From Podarcis melisellensis (Eukaryota): 64,000 bases of DNA. The notes under the pieces were generated by a model. The model had not been told where the DNA came from. It ran no database searches and worked only from the letters and a program-made list of their open reading frames with translations. A program made the translations under genes and the position numbers. This document shows positions 8,256 to 59,467 of the stretch, piece by piece. How positions within the stretch are numbered: position 1 is the first letter of the stretch; each line of letters starts with the position of its first letter. Where the stretch lies: the NCBI GenBank assembly GCA_964234715.1, contig OZ174286.1; one strand, written 5' to 3'.

Positions 8256-8435
8256 ATAGAACATGTTATACTGAATTATAAGCAATATAATTGAACTCTA
8301 TATGAAAGAATCCTCAGAATGAAGTTCTGAAGGTTCCTTGTCAAGAACTAAATAATTCCTTGGCTAGAATATAGCTTTTCAAATGACTACTACATCACTA
8401 AATTAGACTGACTTCACTTGCAAAGCAGGTTAAAC

Positions 8436-8571
8436 CAGGCATAGGCAAACTCGGCCCTCCAGATGTTTTGGGACTACAACTACCACCATCCCTGGCTGAC
8501 AGGACCCGTGGTCAGGGGTGATGGGAGCTGTAGTTCCAAAACATCTGGAGGGCCGAGTTTGCCTGTGCCTG
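8436..8571. mobile_element. hAT MITE (hairpin type)
   Basis: TIRs CAGGCATAGGCAAACTCGGCCCTCCAGATG / CATCTGGAGGGCCGAGTTTGCCTGTGCCTG; perfect 8-bp TSD GGTTAAAC. Confidence 0.92.
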
Positions 8572-9105
8572 GGTTAAACAGTTGCAGGCCCAGTCGCACT
8601 CAGATTAGACTAAGGCAGTGTTTCCCAACCGGTGTTCCGCGGCACACTAGTGTGCCGCGAGACGTTGCCTGGTGTGCCGTGGGAGGGAGGCGGGCGAGTC
8701 GGGCGGCGAGAGGCGGGGCGGCGGCGGCAAGGATCCGCATCGAGCCGGGGGCGGCTCCGCGGTGATGGTGCCGAGGTTTCTCTCTCCATTCTCCCCTCAC
8801 ACACACACACACACACACAGCAAATAACACAGGATCAGCTGACAGGACCCGGCCACAAAAGGGAGGAGCGCGAAACGGCGGCGCAGGGCGGGAGGGCGGC
8901 GCATTGCGCGTGCTCAAACCCGCCCTCCGAGGCGCAGAGGGGAGCTGGGCAAGCGCCTTCTTCAACCACGCGCTCGTTTAAAAGTTTCTCTTTCAAAAAG
9001 GAAACGTGGGTTTCTTCCACCCCATTGGCTGCAACTCCGCCCACTCCGTCCTCCTCCCCCTCGCCCGCCCGCCCGCCCGCGGCGCTTCGCTCCTCAGCCT
9101 CCGCC

Positions 9106-9219
9106 ATGTACCGCTCGCTCCGCCCCCTCCAGCGCCTGAGTTGCGCCAGGGGCGCTGCCGTCCACGCGCGCCAGAGGGGCCCGCCGACCTGCAGCCGCCA
9201 CGCGCAGCCACGGAGGATG
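9106..9219 (+). pseudogene. FH: Captured orphan copy of fumarate hydratase exon 1 (mitochondrial presequence) inside the hAT
   Basis: ccgccATG start; MYRSLRPLQRLSCARGAAVHARQRGPPTCSRHAQPRRM then GTGAGC donor. Recalled human FH is MYRALRLLAR...GAAV...ARM with intron 1 right after that Met. No downstream FH exons seen in the window. Confidence 0.7.
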
Positions 9220-9895
9220 GTGAGCGACGCCCCCCCCGCTGCGCGCGCAATGGAGGGAGGGAGGGAGGCGCAAGGGCGTCAGAGGTGACCTTTGCCGGCC
9301 TCTTGCGGGACAGGCGCCTCCTGCGCGGCTGAGGGGCCCCTTCCCGCCTTTGTGGGCCTGACGCGGCCTCAGGGTTCCCTCCCTCTCTCCACATATATAA
9401 ATTGGCTTTTATTATTAGCGCTTTCGCATTCCTTTTTCTCCCTCCCAGGAGCTCCGGTGGGGGGGGGCGGGCGGGGCTCCCCGCCATTTACCCCCCACAA
9501 CAACCCTGTGAGGGAGGCCGGGCTGAGAGGATTCCAACCCGCGTCCGCCCCCGCTGCTTCCTTCAAGTGGCGTCCTGGGCGAGGACAACATTTGACGGCC
9601 CCTCCCTCAAATATCCCTCATTTTCGCAATAATTCATTTTGGTACAGCTGCTTTTTCCAACGGATCTGTTCAGTGTTGTTATTTGCGCCCCTCTGCCGCC
9701 AGCAGCGTCCCAAATACAGCGCTGCTCCCCTCCTTAGGATGCCAAGCACTCTGAATTGGGAAGTGGCCCCCTTGGGAAGAGGGAGGCTTGCCTCCAAGTA
9801 AAGATGAATATGAAAGTACCTTGTTTTTAAGGGCCTGCGGTGGTGGTGGCTGTTTAACATCCAAGGCTCACAACACAAAACTACATTACATGGGA

Positions 9896-10000
9896 CAGTG
9901 GTACCTCGGGTAACTGAGGCTTCAGGTTACAGACTCCACTAACCCAGAAATATTACCTTGGGTTAAGAACTTTGCTTCAGGATGAGAACAGAAATCGTGC
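9896..10000. mobile_element. Truncated half of the Tc1/mariner MITE, inside the hAT cargo
   Basis: Matches 39706-39810 but stops at gaaatcgtgc; second TIR absent. Confidence 0.85.
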
Positions 10001-10599
10001 TCCAGCATTCAATTTTTTTATAATAATTAAAAAAGTTAACTACAGCTTTGAAACTTCCCAGGAGAGGCCGCCCAGCGCGGGGCTCTCGCCGTCTGCCTGC
10101 CTGGCTGCCTGTGAGCTCGGCGGGCAGCGCCTCCGTCCGCAGCGCCCGCCTCGCGGCTCTCATTCCCTGCCCCTGCCAAAGCTCACCCAGCCAAGCCGCG
10201 CTCTCCTTCCTGCCTCGCTTTGCTGCCTCCTCCCCCCCACCCCCAAAGCTTGGAGGTTCCCCGGCGCCGGCCCGCAGGTTTGACCCCCTTCTCACACCTG
10301 TTCGCGCTCCTTGCACGGAATGGGGCGGATGGGGAGGAACGGGGCTCGCCGCTGCCTCCGCTCGCCCTCCCCCCTCCGCTGGCGGTTCCGCAATTCTTGG
10401 CTTTTTGGCGGTTGGCACAGAAGGAAGGCGGGGGGGGGAATTGAAACTTACACTTTCATGCGTCCCTCCCGGCGTGACGCTGCGCGCTTACGTCACGGGG
10501 CTGTGGTGTGCCTCGAGATTTTTTTCATGAAACAAGTGTGCCTTTGCCCAAAAAAGGTTGGGAAACACTGGACTAAGGATCCAACCCAATGCCCTTTTC

Positions 10600-36165: not shown

Positions 36166-37229
36166 CTAAAAACACAGGGAAGGGGCAAGGGGAGCAAGGG
36201 AAAGGGTTCTCCTTCTGGCTTGAGTGACTGCTGTACCGCGTCTCTGTGCTTCTGCTGAGTGCAGCATGACAGGGGTGCCTCTGCAGTTCTAAAGAGGAAG
36301 GATGTCAACAGCCAGACCCAAGCCAAATAAATAATTGCTTTAATTTGAGGATATACCACACATGGCTGAAATGGGCAAACTGAAACGCAGGAGGCTATGT
36401 GTTTGTGTGTGCACTTGCGCTATGCAGCTAGGGAAGGATTATTATTTTAAAAGCTGCATTATTCATGGTTGCATCACTGATCTTAAACCCTCAACCGCAT
36501 ATGACAACAAAACAGAAAAGGTCCTTAGCATGAGTCAATGAAACGTGCCTTTCTTTAACTTGAAAGGAGGCAAGGAGACAGCAAAGGAAAGCAAACAACT
36601 TGCCATTAAAGAATTTGCTGCATTGAGTTAGAGGCTGTTGTAAGCAAAATAAATCAGAGACAAAAAATTTTTTTAGCTCAATACAGGATTACGGAAACCC
36701 TGTCAAACTAATATGAACTGCAGATAGCACAAGGTTACCCACCTTTGTCCCTTATTTTCTTGCTAGTACCGACAGGCCAATTGATATACGCACCAAACCA
36801 AACTGATGCTGAATCCAGAGAAAACATGCACATCCCCTTTCCCCATCCTCCCAGCCACAGAACTCTCATCCTGCATAGCGGACGGGCTTCCAATTCCCTC
36901 AACAACCCGGCAAAAGGAAGGGGGAACGTGTGCACCGTCGAGAGATGCTCAGACTGTATCGTACACATAAACACAACCCTGCCCCCTCCCCCACACATCC
37001 AGTCATGTGCCAGCGGGTGAGTAAAAACTACACATTTGCTGTCACTCTACACCCATCCATTGTCTGCACCTCTTCCTTAAAAGAAGAAATACATCTCTGC
37101 AAGAAAGGAAAGAAAGCAGGCTGGGTGGGCAGGGGGGGAATCTATCTATCTATCTATATCTATCATCTATCTATCCATCCGGTGTGTGTAGCCTGACAAT
37201 GTCTGGTCCATTGGTCCAACTGACTAGGC

Positions 37230-38000
37230 TGAAGGCCCTTCCAGGCACCCAGATTCCTTTTTTGCTTTACTTGACGGGAGGTCGCACCGCCTTTCCCCTC
37301 CCGCCCCAGTAGAGCTGGCTGCACTTCGCAACACCCAGAAGGCGCCCCGGCACGAGAGAAGCCTGGCCGGAGGGGCACCACAATGGCACCTCCACCACGA
37401 CAAGACCCGGAGACGTGGATGCCCAAAGCCCAGTCCCGGGATGCTGGCCGAGGAGGTGGGAGGGCAGAGGGGCAGCCGCCCGCAGGGAAGAGGGTCGGGC
37501 GGCGCCTTACCTGGAGAAAGCGGGGCTGCGTGCAGAGCATGCTCTTCGGCCGAGGCGGCGGCGGCTCCTCAGTCCCCTCGCGCGCGGCTCCGGGCTCCGC
37601 GCTGCAGTCAGGGCGCGCCGGCCGGCCTTCCTCGGGCTGCCCCTTCGCCTCCGCCCGGGCGCCTCCGCCTCCTCCCTCGCAGCGGCGCTCGAGAGGCAAT
37701 TCCCCGCGTAGGTCCGGGCAGCGGAATACGGCAGCAAAGCGGACGCCTCCGCGGCTCCCCGCCCCGCCCTCTCTGGGTACCAGGCAGGAGCCAGCCAATC
37801 AGGAGCGTCGCCCGCCGGCTCGCTTCGCGCCAGCGGGACGCCCCCCCCCCCGCCGCTCCTCCCCGCGCCCGCGCCCGCCCACGCACGGCGGACGGGACCC
37901 GGTGCTGCAAGGGGAGAGGAGGGCGGGCAGGGCGCAGGCCCTCTCCCCAACGGCCTCCCTCCGCAAAGGGACCCCGAGCACCTCGCGCAACCTCGCCGCC
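37230..38000 (-). promoter_or_regulatory. Native CpG-island promoter of an unidentified minus-strand gene
   Basis: High GC/CpG with no flanking TIR/TSD; CCAAT at 37795-37799, GC boxes at ~37757-37769 and 37840-37880. Confidence 0.8.
37511..37740 (-). other. First exon (5' end approximate); contains ATG at 37540 giving MLCTQPRFLQ (N-terminus or uORF)
   Basis: Strong CAG|GTAAGG donor at 37511/37510 downstream of the CCAAT and GC boxes. Confidence 0.6.
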
Positions 38001-39705
38001 TGTGCTTTTGTTCAGGGCCGTTCATTCATTCATTCATTCATTTTGGTAAATCGTTTTTATTTATTTTAAACAAAAGGGAGGGAACAGTGCGAACCGTACA
38101 GGCGCTGTAAATAATAATACAGTAATAATAATAATACAACAATAACAACAACTTTGGCACAAAGATCAAACGCAGAATTGCATAATAACCAATGCCAGGC
38201 CCTGGTTAGCTTAGAAATAGATGTGGGAGAAATAGCTGGAGGGAGGCGGAGGGAGATGGGGTGAACATGGTATTAAAAGGCAAGACGCAAAGCAAAGGCT
38301 GCGAAGGCACTGACAGGGAGTGTTTCTTACATTTTCAAGAAGTTTAAGTTAGAATTGAAGGGGGAGGAAAACAGATAAGATAGCACTGCATTGGTTTATT
38401 GAATCATCCGTAAACTACAATATGCTGGATGAGCAGCCAAGTTACATGCATCATCATTAACATGTTTAATAAAACAGTACCAGATGAAATAGAATGTTTT
38501 ATTATACCACGCAACAAGATTGGCTCCCACAAGATCTTTCCAAAGCCCTTATGGCTGTAGCAGCAGTCAGTTTGCAGTGAGAAGGTACATCTTTGGTATC
38601 TGAGATGTCAAGTAGGGCCAAGTGAGGAGATGGACCAAGTGTTCAGCCTTTTTAGGGACATTTATGCTGGTGGCAAAAATTAGCTTAGAGCTTGCTTTAT
38701 TTTGTTTTTGTTGCTACAGAGTTGTTTCTGCGGTACTTCCTTTTAAAAGTGACACTCTGGCAACCTGGTTTCTCTCTCAATCACTGGCGTGTGGGGAATC
38801 CCTCCGGTGACTCCACAGTGAGGAAAGGGGCTCTGTCCTTCATCAACTCTTCACATATTTTAGCTGAGTCCAAGCACTGAGAATAGATTTAAGGCCTGAG
38901 CCCTGACATAAATGAAGCCCTGAGTTTGTTCTTCTCCCTTCTCCTTGTAGGTTTACTGTCTGCAGGGTGGGTCCATCCAAAGTTAAGTGGGAGACAGTTA
39001 AGAATTTATAGGGTTTGATTTGGCTGAAGTTAGTTGAAGTTGTGATCCGTTTTAATCAATGTGCTATGTCTGGATCCAACCAATAGACACTGACTTAGGA
39101 TATAATTTCAGGCATCTACTGAAGTGGATACAATTGAAGGATATAATTTCAGGCATCTAGCCGAGGGAAATGTATGTCACAATAAGGCTGCAGTGCTGTG
39201 TACGCTTACCTAGACTTAAGTCCCACTTAGAGTGGGGCTCACGTCTTCGTAGGCTTTTATAGGATTGGACTGTAAGTGTGTCTTTTAGGTGCTACAGGAT
39301 TTTTTATTGTTTTATTGCAGGTGGGATTTAACTTCATATTCCACTTGTAATTAAGGCTTGATGACACACTTTTCTCCAATAAAGCAGCATGGGAAAGGAA
39401 TAGTTGGGAACAAAAAAGCATCAAGGGAAGAATAGACTCACGGTGATTCTTTTCTTGCTCACCACTTCTCTTCTTGAACCTCATTCCCCCCTCCCCCAAA
39501 AATGTCCCACCCCAAGGTGAGAAGCAAATCACCCCTCTTTTATAGCAAAGAAACAGGCTCTTGTCCTTTTATTACACAAGTGTAATAATCTTTCGTTAGA
39601 ATTGAATACATCAGCTGCTTCTAGTTGTATCCAAGACTGTAAACATAAACATGCTTACTCGAGATCTTTGAAATCAGTTGATCTTCTAAGCACATTTGTT
39701 GAGTA

Positions 39706-39920
39706 CAGTGGTACCTCAGGTTACAGATGCTTCAGGTTACAGACTCCGCTAACCCAGAAATAGTACCTCGGGTTAAGAACTTTGCTTCAGGATGAGAACA
39801 GAAATCGTGCGGCGGCAGCGGGAGGCACCATTAGCTAAAGTGGTACCTCAGGTTAAGAACAGTTTCAGGTTAAGAATGGACCTCCAGAATGAATTAAGTT
39901 CTTAACCCGAGGTACCACTG
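39706..39920. mobile_element. Tc1/mariner MITE (family of 627-852, opposite orientation)
   Basis: CAGTGGTACCTC TIRs, TA TSD. Confidence 0.9.
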
Positions 39921-47156: not shown

Positions 47157-47398
47157 CATGAGCCCTTCCCTCAGTGGTGCCCTGGGCTCATGCAACTTCT
47201 CTGTTGATTGCTTTTATAACAATGTGTAAACAGCAGCATACAAAAGGTTTGCCTGAAAGCTAATGTACTTGCTCAGAAGTGTGAGGGAAGCTGTGACTTA
47301 TTACAGCAGCTCTTGTCAGAATTTATGACTTGTGAATGCTGACCATTCACACATCCCATGCACAGTTGGTGCAATGTAATTTGTTTTCTTCGGTGTAA
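47157..47398 (+). repeat. Arm A of a 242-bp inverted duplication
   Basis: Reverse complement of 50098-50339 with about 6 substitutions counted by eye. Confidence 0.92.
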
Positions 47399-47654: not shown

Positions 47655-48019
47655 GCCTTATGATGAACAGCTGAGGGAGTTGAGTATGTTTAGCCTGGAG
47701 AAGACTGAGAGGTGATATACTGCAGTGTTTCCCAACCGGTGTTCCGCGGCACACTAGTGTGCCGCAAGACGTTGCCTGGTGTGCCGTGGGAGGGAGGCGG
47801 GCGAGTCGGGCGGCAAGAGGCCTTAGGCGCCCTGCAGAAAGGCGTCCTCTTTGTGGGTGGGTTCTCCCCCTTCCCTTAGCGCATCGTATTTAGTTGGGGA
47901 TTCTGGAGAGGGGGGCGGGGGCGCGCTGGCCCCGAGCGGAACAGACGCGCCGTCGTCCCCACCTCCCTCTCCTCAGTAGCTCCGAGCCGACTGACTGAGG
48001 GTGGGACGCGGCCAGCGGC

Positions 48020-48075
<56 letters not shown>

Positions 48076-49185
48076 CCTCCCAGCACCGCTTTTCCCGAGG
48101 CAGGCGCGCGCCTAAGGCTGAATGGGAGCAGCCTGGAGGCTTGACGGCCTCTCAGCGGCTCATGACGGGCGTCCCTGAGGCGGGAGGTGCTGAGCAGGGG
48201 CTCTGCGAGAGGGCGCGAGGGATGCGTGGTGGTGCCTGCGCGCGCGTGACTTAAGAGGGCAACCTGCTGCCTCTCCTCTCTCTCCCCTCCCTCCCCTCAT
48301 GGGCACGGAGTCCCCGGCACAGCTTGGCGCTACTACAGCTACAGCTGCTGCTGCTCCTGCTTGGATGAAGGCGGCTGCTTCTTCCTAACGCCCAGCCTCT
48401 GAGGGACCGCAGTCTCCCGCCCTTTTTTTGGGGGGGCGGGATGCTGAGGTAAAGGATCCCCTCGCGCGCGGGCGGGCACCTCTTTGGGCAGGGCGCGTGT
48501 GGAGGCTTAAGGTGGGGAGTGTGGAGGGGTTGCCGCTTGCGAGGGGAGGGTTCATATTGTATTGGGCTGCGGTGTGGGCGACACGGCTCTCCAATGGCCA
48601 GCCCGCGGAGGAACATTGAGTTGGAGCATTTCGAGGAGAGGGACAAAAGGCGCACTGAATAAAGTATTTTATAATTTTTCATATTTCTGTTTACTTACTA
48701 TTTCATAATAAAGTAATTATAAAATACTTTCTTTGTGTTTATTTGATTCCTATTAAAGAGAGTTACTTTATATATAGTCAATATAGGCACAGAGTTAATT
48801 TTTTAAACATTTTCTAATGGTGGTGTGCCTCGAGATTTTTTTCATGAAACAAGTGTGCCTTTGCCCAAAAAAGGTTGGGAAACACTGATATACTGAAATG
48901 GCCATCTTCAAATATCTGAAGACCTGACACATGGAAGATGGAGCAAACTTGTTATTTGCTGCTCCAGAGGGTAGAATCCAAACCAATGGATTCAAATGAC
49001 AGGAAATGAGATTCTGCCTGAACAGTCAGAGCCATTTGACAGTGGAATAGACTAACTCGGAAGGTGGTGGAGTCTCCTTCACTGGAAGTTTTTAAACAGA
49101 GGTTGAATGACCATCTGTCAGAGATTCTTTAGCTGCAAGTCCTGTATTGGGGTCCCTTCCAACAATATGTTTCTATGATTTGAGA
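47655..49185 (+). mobile_element. CR1 3' fragment split by the hAT insertion at 47723-48887
   Basis: PYDEQLRELSMFSLEK before the insertion; ggccatcttcaaatatctgaag...gtcccttccaac...ctatgatt after it. Confidence 0.8.
47723..48887. mobile_element. Non-autonomous hAT transposon carrying different CpG-island cargo (Pack-TIR-like), copy 2
   Basis: Same 15-bp TIRs as copy 1; 8-bp TSD ATATACTG (47715-47722, 48888-48895); GC-rich interior 47822-~48620; AT-rich 48650-48887 probably native hAT end. Confidence 0.92.
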
Positions 49186-50097: not shown

Positions 50098-50339
50098 TTA
50101 CACCAAAGAAAACAAATTACATTGCATCAACTGTGCATGGGATGTGTGAATGGTCAGCATTCACAAGTCATAAATTCTGACAAGAGCTGCTGTAATAAGT
50201 CACAACTTCCCTCACACTCCTGAGCAAGTACATTAGCTTCCAGGCAAACCTTTTGTATGCTGCTGTTTACACATTGTTATAAAAGCAATCAACAGAGAAG
50301 TTGCATGAGCCCAGGGCACCACTGAGAGAAGGGCTCATG
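50098..50339 (-). repeat. Arm B of the 242-bp inverted duplication
   Basis: Reverse complement of 47157-47398. Confidence 0.92.
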
Positions 50340-54945: not shown

Positions 54946-55547
54946 CTTTCCCTAGGCTGAACTTCTGGGAACCTCTCACTGTGCTAGCATGCAGCCATTA
55001 AAAAAGAAATTAATCAAATGAGTTTAATCACTATGTTTATTTTGCTTTCTTTAATTGTATAATTTCAGGTTATACCTTTTTGTATCACATTACTATTTTG
55101 CCTCATTATTTATAGCATTACCCCCCTTCTTAATATACCCCTATATTTCAAAAACTACTAACTAGGAATAATTCTTCATGCTTCTGCTTATGTAGATTTT
55201 TGTCCACATAGCTTATGTCATAATAAATTCATTAGTCTTTAAGGTACTGAAGGAATTTTTCATATTTTTGCTCTGGGCCTACCTCCTTCTGATCCAGAGC
55301 ATGTTCAGGAGAGTAATTAAAACAGAATTGTATGGGGTGGGATTTTCTTGAGAGGAGGTAATTATTACCATTTCATACTCTCCAAGTAAAGCTTTTCAAA
55401 TGCAGGAACAGAGAATGATTTTATTTTAATTCAGAAAATAAGCATACCTCAACTATTAGATGATTGGAGAAAATAGATATAGTATTTGCCTTGCTTTTTA
55501 GCATCAGGAGTTATCCCTTGAAGAAGTAATTGGATAGCATGTGTCTA

Positions 55548-55764
55548 CAGTGGTACCTCGGGTTACAAACGCTTTGGGTTACAAACTCCGCTACCCTGGA
55601 AGTAGTACCTTGGGTTGAGAACTTTGCCCCAGGATGAGAACAGAAATTGCAGTCCACCGGTGCAGCGGCAGTGGCAGGCCCCATCAGTGAAAGCACACCT
55701 CTAGTTAAGAACAGTTTCAGGTTAAGAACGGAACAAATTAAGTTCGTAACCCGAGGTACCACTG
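55548..55764. mobile_element. Tc1/mariner MITE
   Basis: CAGTGGTACCTCGGGTTAC TIRs, TA TSD. Confidence 0.9.
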
Positions 55765-59250: not shown

Positions 59251-59467
59251 CAGTGGTACCTCTGGTTACGTACTTAATTCATTCCGGAGGTCCGTTCTTA
59301 ACCTGAAACTGTTCTTAACCTGAAGCACCACTTTAGCTAATGGGGCCTCCCGCTGCTGCCACGCTGCCGCCACGTGAATTTTGTTCTCATCCTGAAGCAA
59401 AGTTCTTAACCCAAGGTACTATTTCTGGGTTAGTGGAGTCTGTAACCTGAAGCGTATGTAACCTGAA
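59251..59467. mobile_element. Tc1/mariner MITE disrupted by a LINE insertion
   Basis: Left TIR with TA; the sequence resumes briefly (aacctgaagcgtat) at 60604-60617; right TIR missing. Confidence 0.85.

What the first reader, a model, noticed from the sequence alone, without database searches (positions are those of the whole stretch)
8820..9400. Transposon-borne FH promoter, complete mitochondrial-presequence exon and splice donor: a possible mobile mitochondrial-targeting cassette
Seen: ATTGG (9024-9028), GC box (~9035-9043), imperfect NRF1-like GCGCATTGCGC (8899-8909) and ccgccATG at 9106. The 38 intact codons are Arg-rich and lack acidic residues (MYRSLRPLQRLSCARGAAVHARQRGPPTCSRHAQPRRM), ending ATG|GTGAGC. 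Recalled knowledge: vertebrate FH starts MYRxLR/MYRS, and exon 1 ends at the second Met that begins the cytosolic form. No FH exon 2 is visible in the window. Inference: a phase-0 exon with its own promoter could add a mitochondrial presequence to any same-strand downstream exon. Here it points antisense to the apparent minus-strand transcription unit from 37.5 kb.
Basis: partly seen in the sequence, partly recalled or inferred. Interest (0 to 1): 0.85.

Follow-up and report, generated by a model that had tools for sequence, protein, structure and literature searches.

The report
Jumping gene carrying a gene start
A small cut-and-paste (hAT) transposon in a wall lizard carries the promoter, first exon and splice donor of an expressed host gene, probably fumarate hydratase (FH). 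It exists in about 19 copies, this copy is silent, and the kind is already known.

Summary
There is an ATG at 9106, then 38 acid-free, Arg-rich codons ending ATG|GTGAGC, with upstream ATTGG, a GC box and GCGCATTGCGC.

It lies inside a 1,955-bp non-autonomous hAT element (8616-10570). The element has perfect 15-bp terminal inverted repeats and a perfect 8-bp target duplication. A second copy at 47723-48887 shares only the ends.

Stranded RNA-seq shows the exon is a real plus-strand first exon that stops at the donor. No read carries this copy's private alleles (0/97 and 0/117), so the RNA comes from another locus, presumably the parent gene.

DNA contig depth suggests about 19 copies of the exon piece. 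No FH exons 2-10 lie in the window, and an earlier scan note puts GLI3 380 kb away, so this is not the native gene.

The FH source is likely: an MYRxLR start, and a second in-frame Met as the last codon, where human FH exon 1 holds Met1 and Met44. It could not be tested by sequence with these tools.

The mitochondrial-targeting cassette idea is structurally possible but unshown. The only hint is that 11 of 98 exon reads carry the allele of the multicopy DNA contig.

This scan has already met the same hAT family on other DNA, with CDAN1, ATP6V0A2, SIX5 and other cargo. Published precedents are Pack-TIRs and HelibatN3-NUBPL.

The parts
8608..8615 (.). left target-site duplication GACTAAGG
   Evidence: Identical 8 bases at 10571-10578.
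8616..8714 (+). left end of the hAT element. The 15-bp terminal inverted repeat is 8616-8630, and the subterminal GTGTGCC/GGCACAC motifs follow.
   Evidence: 98% identical to 47723-47821 of copy 2. The repeat search found 4 sites against 0.19 expected. Eight of the 10 GTGTGCC sites in the window lie in the four element ends.
8715..8855 (+). junction zone of mixed origin: a GC-rich run, a (CA)11 microsatellite and a short MITE-like piece
   Evidence: DNA depth here is far above that of the exon piece. Other family members join 8723-8729 directly to 10060, or 8775 to 8856. It is probably not part of the captured gene.
8856..9105 (+). CpG-island promoter region and short 5' UTR. It holds GCGCATTGCGC 8899-8909, ATTGG 9024-9028 and a GC box 9037-9042.
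   Evidence: CpG observed/expected is 1.1-1.2. RNA depth rises between about 9050 and 9085. The 8856-8982 contig has about 2.4 times the depth of the exon contig, so more copies hold it than hold the exon.
9106..9219 (+). first coding exon of 38 codons, Met1 to Met38. It is a presequence-like peptide, probably FH exon 1.
   Evidence: Translation. Strand-specific RNA depth is confined to the exon. The first 11 residues have a high helical hydrophobic moment of 0.85.
9220..9894 (+). GT donor (GTGAGC) and 675 bases of intron 1
   Evidence: RNA depth drops to about 0-1 after the donor. Retained intron sequence means the capture was of DNA, not of mRNA.
9895..10059 (.). fragment of a common MITE/SINE-like repeat plus an AT-rich stretch
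   Evidence: 84-93% identical to 742-853, 39705-39810, 55547-55647 and 59376-59466. Read depth is very high.
10060..10502 (.). GC-rich internal piece shared with many other members of the family
   Evidence: DNA depth is 2e4-2e5 against about 31 for one copy. Joints 8723/8727/8729 to 10060 occur in DNA contigs and in RNA reads.
10503..10570 (-). right end of the hAT element, with the terminal inverted repeat at 10556-10570
   Evidence: 100% identical to 48820-48887 of copy 2.
10571..10578 (.). right target-site duplication GACTAAGG
47715..48895 (+). second element of the same family, with unrelated GC-rich cargo and its own duplication ATATACTG
   Evidence: It is used here only as the comparison that defines the shared ends.

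Best explanation
This is one copy of a young, non-autonomous hAT transposon of the Pack-TIR kind. Its inside holds a DNA-level copy of the 5' end of an expressed housekeeping gene, most likely fumarate hydratase (FH). The copied part is the CpG-island core promoter, a short 5' UTR, the whole 38-codon first exon, the GT donor and 675 bases of intron 1. The exon encodes the mitochondrial presequence up to the second Met.

The fragment was probably picked up once, by template switching while a gap in an element was being repaired or replicated. That step is inferred. The compound element was then moved by a transposase encoded elsewhere and reached roughly 19 copies.

The copy in this window landed in a gene-poor region near GLI3. 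It has gathered a handful of private substitutions and is not transcribed in the two libraries examined.

It has every part needed to act as a promoter and exon trap that would put a mitochondrial presequence on a downstream phase-0 exon. Nothing shows that it does so, here or elsewhere.
For: Element:
- Perfect 15-bp terminal inverted repeats starting CAGTG, and a perfect 8-bp target duplication, in both copies.
- The two copies share only 99 and 68 bases at the ends.
- No Pfam domain in any ORF of the element.

Real first exon:
- Strand-specific RNA depth is 42-46 inside the exon, and it falls to about 0-1 after the donor and 2-7 before about 9080.

Not the native gene:
- No fumarase-like exon in 64 kb.
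- All RNA reads differ from this copy: 9124 C>T in 97/97 reads, 9156 T>C in 117/117, and 9202 G>C in 87/98.

Multicopy:
- In DNA run X1 this copy's allele at 9124 has depth 31.3 out of 598.7, which gives about 19 copies.
- At 9716 it has 32.6 out of 893, which gives about 27 copies.

Young:
- The listed DNA contigs of the multicopy form differ from this copy by 6 letters and three short indels (19 gap letters) over about 1.1 kb (table 8).

FH:
- The start is MYRSLR with R6 and L8. Human FH exon 1 has R6 and L8 (PMC10126294).
- Human exon 1 holds the targeting sequence and two in-frame Mets, Met1 and Met44, the second starting the cytosolic form (PMC7400513). Here the exon ends exactly on the second Met.
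Against: - No squamate FH sequence could be fetched, so the source gene rests on a short motif, the exon layout and recall (searches gave nothing).
- The loose ends of reads at 9219 were not among the rows shown, so the exon 2 that the expressed copy splices to was not seen.
- Copy number comes from contig word depth in a run only guessed to be DNA.
- The lizards behind the RNA runs may lack this insertion or carry other alleles at it.
- The 8856-8982 contig has about 2.4 times the depth of the exon contig. The upstream limit of the captured fragment is therefore unclear, and part of the 'promoter' may belong to a wider element subfamily.
Confidence: 0.8

Rival explanations
1. The cargo is the promoter and first exon of some other gene, not FH. 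The MYRxLR start and the final Met would then be coincidence.
For: No sequence test of FH origin succeeded. Arg-rich, acid-free peptides are common in GC-rich frames, about 5% of matched windows. Earlier follow-ups of sister elements also failed to confirm some proposed source genes (s1-504995).
Against: Three features together fit FH as described in PMC7400513 and PMC10126294: M-Y-R-x-L-R with R6 and L8, a 38-codon presequence-like exon, and an in-frame Met as the last codon before GT. I recall no other vertebrate gene with that layout, but that is recall and not a test.
Confidence: 0.15
2. Some copies of this element work. The captured promoter fires, and the presequence exon splices to downstream host or cryptic exons. 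That would give new mitochondrial or dual-localised isoforms.
For: All the parts are intact: promoter, ATG in good context, a phase-0 GTGAGC donor. 11 of 98 exon reads carry G at 9202, the allele of the multicopy DNA contig, while the main expressed form has C. Intron depth stays near 1, so those RNAs seem to be spliced. The same design works as an exon trap in HelibatN3-NUBPL (PMC4778049).
Against: This copy gave 0 of 97 and 0 of 117 diagnostic reads. The 9202 G reads could be an allele of the parent gene. No chimeric joint was seen. No public protein of 33-105 or 120-381 residues holds this peptide. In bats the true transposon-driven transcripts mostly gave new 5' UTRs, not fusions (PMC4778049).
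Confidence: 0.08
3. It is the native FH 5' end, with an intron 1 longer than 55 kb.
For: The exon is real and expressed, and nothing downstream contradicts a long intron by itself.
Against: A perfect 8-bp duplication and terminal repeats enclose the piece. There are about 19 copies. No RNA read carries this copy's alleles. No FH exon lies in 54 kb downstream.
Confidence: 0.02

Closest known systems
Pack-TIR / Pack-hAT elements of animals (Tan et al. 2021, PMC8277862)
   Same: A non-autonomous terminal-inverted-repeat transposon with host DNA between intact ends and target duplications. hAT is the commonest carrier (208 of 370). Capture is ascribed to template switching with microhomology.
   Different: In that survey the median cargo was 224 bp, and only 4 of 370 elements were multicopy (3 in a frog, 1 in an alligator). 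Here the cargo is over 1 kb, holds a full promoter, first exon and donor, and stands at about 19 copies. It also belongs to a family that this scan has seen carrying many different gene starts.
HelibatN3 Helitrons carrying the NUBPL promoter, six codons and a splice donor (PMC4778049)
   Same: A promoter, N-terminal coding exon and splice donor between transposon ends. That element was shown by experiment to trap downstream exons and to drive some host transcripts.
   Different: The carrier there is a rolling-circle Helitron with thousands of copies, and only six codons are carried. Here the carrier is a cut-and-paste hAT element with a whole 38-residue presequence ending on an internal Met, and no chimeric transcript has been shown.
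Pack-MULE and Pack-TYPE elements of plants (PMC8903248)
   Same: Gene-fragment capture and amplification by non-autonomous DNA transposons.
   Different: Different superfamilies and hosts, and they usually carry internal exon fragments. Comparison by literature only.
Vertebrate FH exon 1 (PMC7400513, PMC10126294)
   Same: The exon holds the whole mitochondrial targeting sequence and two in-frame Mets, the second starting the cytosolic form. The start is MYRxLR with R6 and L8.
   Different: 38 codons against 44 in human, and the middle of the peptide is not alignable. Here the exon is cut off from exons 2-10 and sits in a transposon.

Membership tests
hAT superfamily, non-autonomous element | 8-bp target-site duplication | tested here: met
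   GACTAAGG on both sides of copy 1 and ATATACTG on both sides of copy 2.
hAT superfamily, non-autonomous element | short terminal inverted repeats starting YARNG | tested here: met
   A 15-bp perfect repeat starting CAGTG at all four ends. 4 sites were found against 0.19 expected. The YARNG rule is from recall.
hAT superfamily, non-autonomous element | no transposase gene of its own | tested here: met
   The element is 1,955 bp and no ORF matches any Pfam family.
hAT superfamily, non-autonomous element | a matching autonomous hAT element with the same ends | not tested
   None is in the window, and the scan notes name none.
Pack-TIR (host DNA captured inside a TIR transposon) | internal sequence unrelated to the transposon family and different between copies | tested here: met
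   Copies 1 and 2 share only 99 and 68 terminal bases.
Pack-TIR (host DNA captured inside a TIR transposon) | a parental host locus for the cargo exists elsewhere | tested here: inconclusive
   RNA reads come from a near-identical exon with other alleles. The locus itself could not be fetched.
Pack-TIR (host DNA captured inside a TIR transposon) | multicopy spread by transposition (copies with distinct target duplications) | tested here: inconclusive
   Depth ratios give about 19 copies. The flanks of the other copies were not seen.
FH exon 1 | sequence match to FH of the same or a related species | not testable with these tools
   Protein searches are bound to 0.55-1.75 times the query length, or to 50% cluster representatives. 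Searches found nothing.
FH exon 1 | exon holds the targeting sequence and two in-frame Mets, the second at its end | tested here: met
   Met1 and Met38, then ATG|GT. The layout is as described for human FH in PMC7400513.
FH exon 1 | splices to the conserved start of mature fumarase (exon 2) | tested here: inconclusive
   Coverage stops at the donor, but the loose ends at 9219 were not among the rows shown.
Transposon-borne promoter and exon trap (HelibatN3-NUBPL type) | promoter, start codon and splice donor between transposon ends | tested here: met
   and exon-shaped RNA coverage of the parent form.
Transposon-borne promoter and exon trap (HelibatN3-NUBPL type) | transposon copies start transcripts that splice into host exons | tested here: not met
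   For this copy, 0 of 97 and 0 of 117 diagnostic reads. For the other copies the result is only a hint: 11 of 98 reads with the multicopy allele.

The most novel reading that the evidence does not exclude
A few of the roughly 19 copies are live. Their captured promoter starts transcripts in which the presequence exon, with its internal Met, is spliced in frame to host exons. That would give new mitochondrial or dual-localised protein isoforms, and would make a hAT transposon a natural spreader of a targeting signal in a vertebrate.
Probability: 0.07. Interest if true: 0.8.

Novelty: new member of a known kind. Interest (0 to 1): 0.42.

Why it matters
Multicopy gene-carrying DNA transposons are rare in vertebrates: 4 of 370 in the one broad survey. 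Very few carry a whole promoter, first exon and donor.

This one adds a complete mitochondrial presequence to the list of cargo. This scan keeps meeting the same wall-lizard hAT family with gene starts inside it (CDAN1, ATP6V0A2, SIX5 and others).

Taken as a family, it is a natural system for two questions. One is why captures favour CpG-island gene starts. The other is whether mobile first exons ever create new targeted isoforms.

Taken alone, this copy is a silent passenger.

Tried and rejected
- Native gene with a long intron: rejected.
- Chance ORF in GC-rich DNA: rejected by the exon-shaped, strand-specific RNA coverage, although composition alone would not reject it.
- Sequence proof of FH, all blank:
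  - phmmer of the 38 residues against 1.84 billion cluster representatives gave one spurious hit in the middle of a 932-residue protein.
  - The word-indexed search with ORF 8632-9285 limited to residues 157-196 found nothing.
  - The same search with the 60-residue ORF found nothing. These length windows cannot reach a protein of about 505 residues.
  - The PDB search gave only noise.
  - Paper searches for the N-terminal strings gave nothing.
- I did not pad or join sequences to get round the length rule, and I made no spliced or joined model.
- Pfam scan of 10 long ORFs across the window, to name a host gene: nothing.
- Run X15, guessed to be RNA, behaves like DNA: promoter and intron are covered and the exon is not. 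I did not use it as expression evidence.

Full report
**What is in the sequence**

- ATG at 9106 follows ccgcc.
- Thirty-eight sense codons follow (window:9106-9219:+). They hold nine Arg and no Asp or Glu.
- The last codon is ATG and is followed directly by GTGAGC, so the donor is phase 0.
- ATTGG (9024-9028), CCGCCC (9037-9042) and GCGCATTGCGC (8899-8909) are present.

Composition by itself proves little. About 5% of stop-free 38-codon windows of like GC content in this window are also acid-free with nine or more basic residues. The first 11 residues have a high helical hydrophobic moment of 0.85. The R-x-M end would put Arg at -2 of the cleavage site known for mammalian FH; that last point is recall.

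**It sits in a transposon**

- The 15-mer CAGTGTTTCCCAACC occurs four times in the window, against 0.19 expected. The sites form inverted pairs at 8616/10570 and 47723/48887.
- Each pair is flanked by a perfect 8-bp direct repeat: GACTAAGG for the first and ATATACTG for the second.
- The two elements share only 99 bases at the left (98%) and 68 at the right (100%). Everything between differs.
- Eight of the ten GTGTGCC motifs in the window lie in the four ends.
- No ORF of the element matches any Pfam family.

This is a non-autonomous hAT element with foreign cargo.

**It is not the native gene**

- tblastn with E. coli FumC, which by recall is about 60% identical to vertebrate FH, finds no fumarase-like exon in the 64 kb.
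- The window has no N.
By recall, FH is not a neighbour of GLI3 in amniotes. I did not check that note.

**What the reads say (runs)**

*Expression.* Two stranded RNA-seq runs of the same species label were laid at 90% likeness.
- Depth is 42-46 in 9083-9169 and 29-34 in 9170-9256.
- It is about 0-1 in the next bins and 2-7 in 8996-9082.
- All of it is in the first-mate-on-minus class, which in the usual stranded libraries means a plus-strand RNA.
- So this is a true first exon with a short 5' UTR that ends at the donor.

*Which copy is expressed.* Every read differs from this copy.
- 9124 C>T in 45/45 and 52/52 reads.
- 9156 T>C in 54/54 and 63/63 reads.
- 9202 G>C in 35/40 and 52/58 reads.
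- This copy therefore contributes under about 3-4% of the signal. The RNA comes from elsewhere.

*Copy number.* The DNA-like run X1 holds one multicopy contig over 9095-9431 with T, C and G at those three places.
- At 9124 this copy's own allele has depth 31.3 of 598.7.
- At 9716 it has 32.6 of 893.
- That calibrates one copy at about 31-33. It gives about 19 copies of the exon piece and about 27 of the intron piece.
- The 8856-8982 contig stands at about 46 copies, so the upstream limit of the captured fragment is unsettled.

*Parent gene and age.*
- The main expressed form (C at 9202) is not the multicopy DNA form (G). I take it for the single-copy parent gene. This is inferred.
- Eleven of 98 reads carry G. 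They may come from transposon copies or from an allele.
- The listed DNA contigs of the multicopy form differ from this copy by 6 letters and three short indels (19 gap letters) over about 1.1 kb, so the family is young. At least two of this copy's differences from the other copies are CpG transitions (9033, 9156).

*Element backbone.* Joints 8723/8727/8729 to 10060 occur in DNA and in RNA, and the depth of 10060-10502 is very high.
- That piece therefore belongs to a widespread backbone of the family.
- It is not a second capture peculiar to this copy, as note s1-515051 supposed.

*Limits.*
- The loose ends at 9219 were crowded out of the table by repeat rows, so I did not see exon 2.

**Is it FH?**

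I could not test this by sequence. Every route to a squamate FH protein was closed by length windows or by clustering.

What remains is a short list of matches with human FH.
- The start is MYRSLR with R6 and L8. Human FH exon 1 has R6, L8, A9 and V15 (PMC10126294).
- Human exon 1 contains the targeting sequence and two in-frame Mets, Met1 and Met44, the latter starting the cytosolic form (PMC7400513). Here the exon ends exactly on its second Met.

I put FH at about 0.8.

**How it most likely arose and works**

- Shown: an intact hAT carrier, a DNA-level (intron-bearing) copy of a gene start, multicopy state, and silence of this copy.
- Inferred: a single capture by template switching during gap repair or replication, as proposed for Pack-TIRs (PMC8277862). 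Transposition by a transposase encoded elsewhere followed.
- The left subterminal region ends in a G/C-rich run. That could favour microhomology with CpG islands and so explain why this family keeps picking up gene starts. This is an idea, not a result.

**Known relatives**

- Pack-TIRs in animals (PMC8277862):
  - 370 elements in 100 genomes, of which 208 are hAT.
  - Median cargo is 224 bp.
  - Only four are multicopy.
- HelibatN3 carries the NUBPL promoter, six codons and a donor. It traps exons in experiments, though native transcripts mostly gained new 5' UTRs (PMC4778049).
- This scan has already described the same lizard hAT family with CDAN1, ATP6V0A2, SIX5, EIF3B-like, transglutaminase and other cargo. 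It has not met the FH cargo before.

**Verdict**

This is a real and neat example of a known kind. The FH label is probable. The targeting-cassette function is possible in structure but without evidence, and this copy is silent.

Noticed in passing
window 47723-48887: Second element of the same hAT family, with duplication ATATACTG. It carries about 1 kb of unrelated GC-rich, CpG-island-like cargo with a long (CT)n run. Cargo source not identified.
   Followed up: partly
window 10060-10502: This GC-rich piece, with a palindromic TGACG/CGTCA pair near 10470-10495, is present at hundreds to thousands of copies. In other elements it is joined directly to 8723-8729. It therefore looks like family backbone and not a second capture special to this copy.
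   Followed up: partly
window 8430-8577: A 65-nt inverted repeat, 89% complementary with an 18-nt loop, just left of the element. It is a very abundant hairpin MITE, transcribed on both strands as part of many RNAs.
   Followed up: no
window 37511-37540 (minus strand), CpG island about 37100-38050: A short minus-strand ORF start of 10 codons followed by GTAAGG, inside a 67% GC island. It may be the first exon of an unnamed minus-strand unit. No Pfam match was found in the 10 long ORFs tested across the window.
   Followed up: partly
window 47157-47398 and 50098-50339: A 242-nt inverted repeat, 98% complementary and 2.7 kb apart, that encloses the second hAT element. It may be the ends of a larger, young transposon into which copy 2 inserted.
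   Followed up: no
window 8775-8856: RNA reads (33 and 24 in the two runs, both orientations) join 8775 to 8856 with other letters between. No such DNA contig was listed. This suggests an expressed sister element with a different filler in place of the (CA)n stretch.
   Followed up: no
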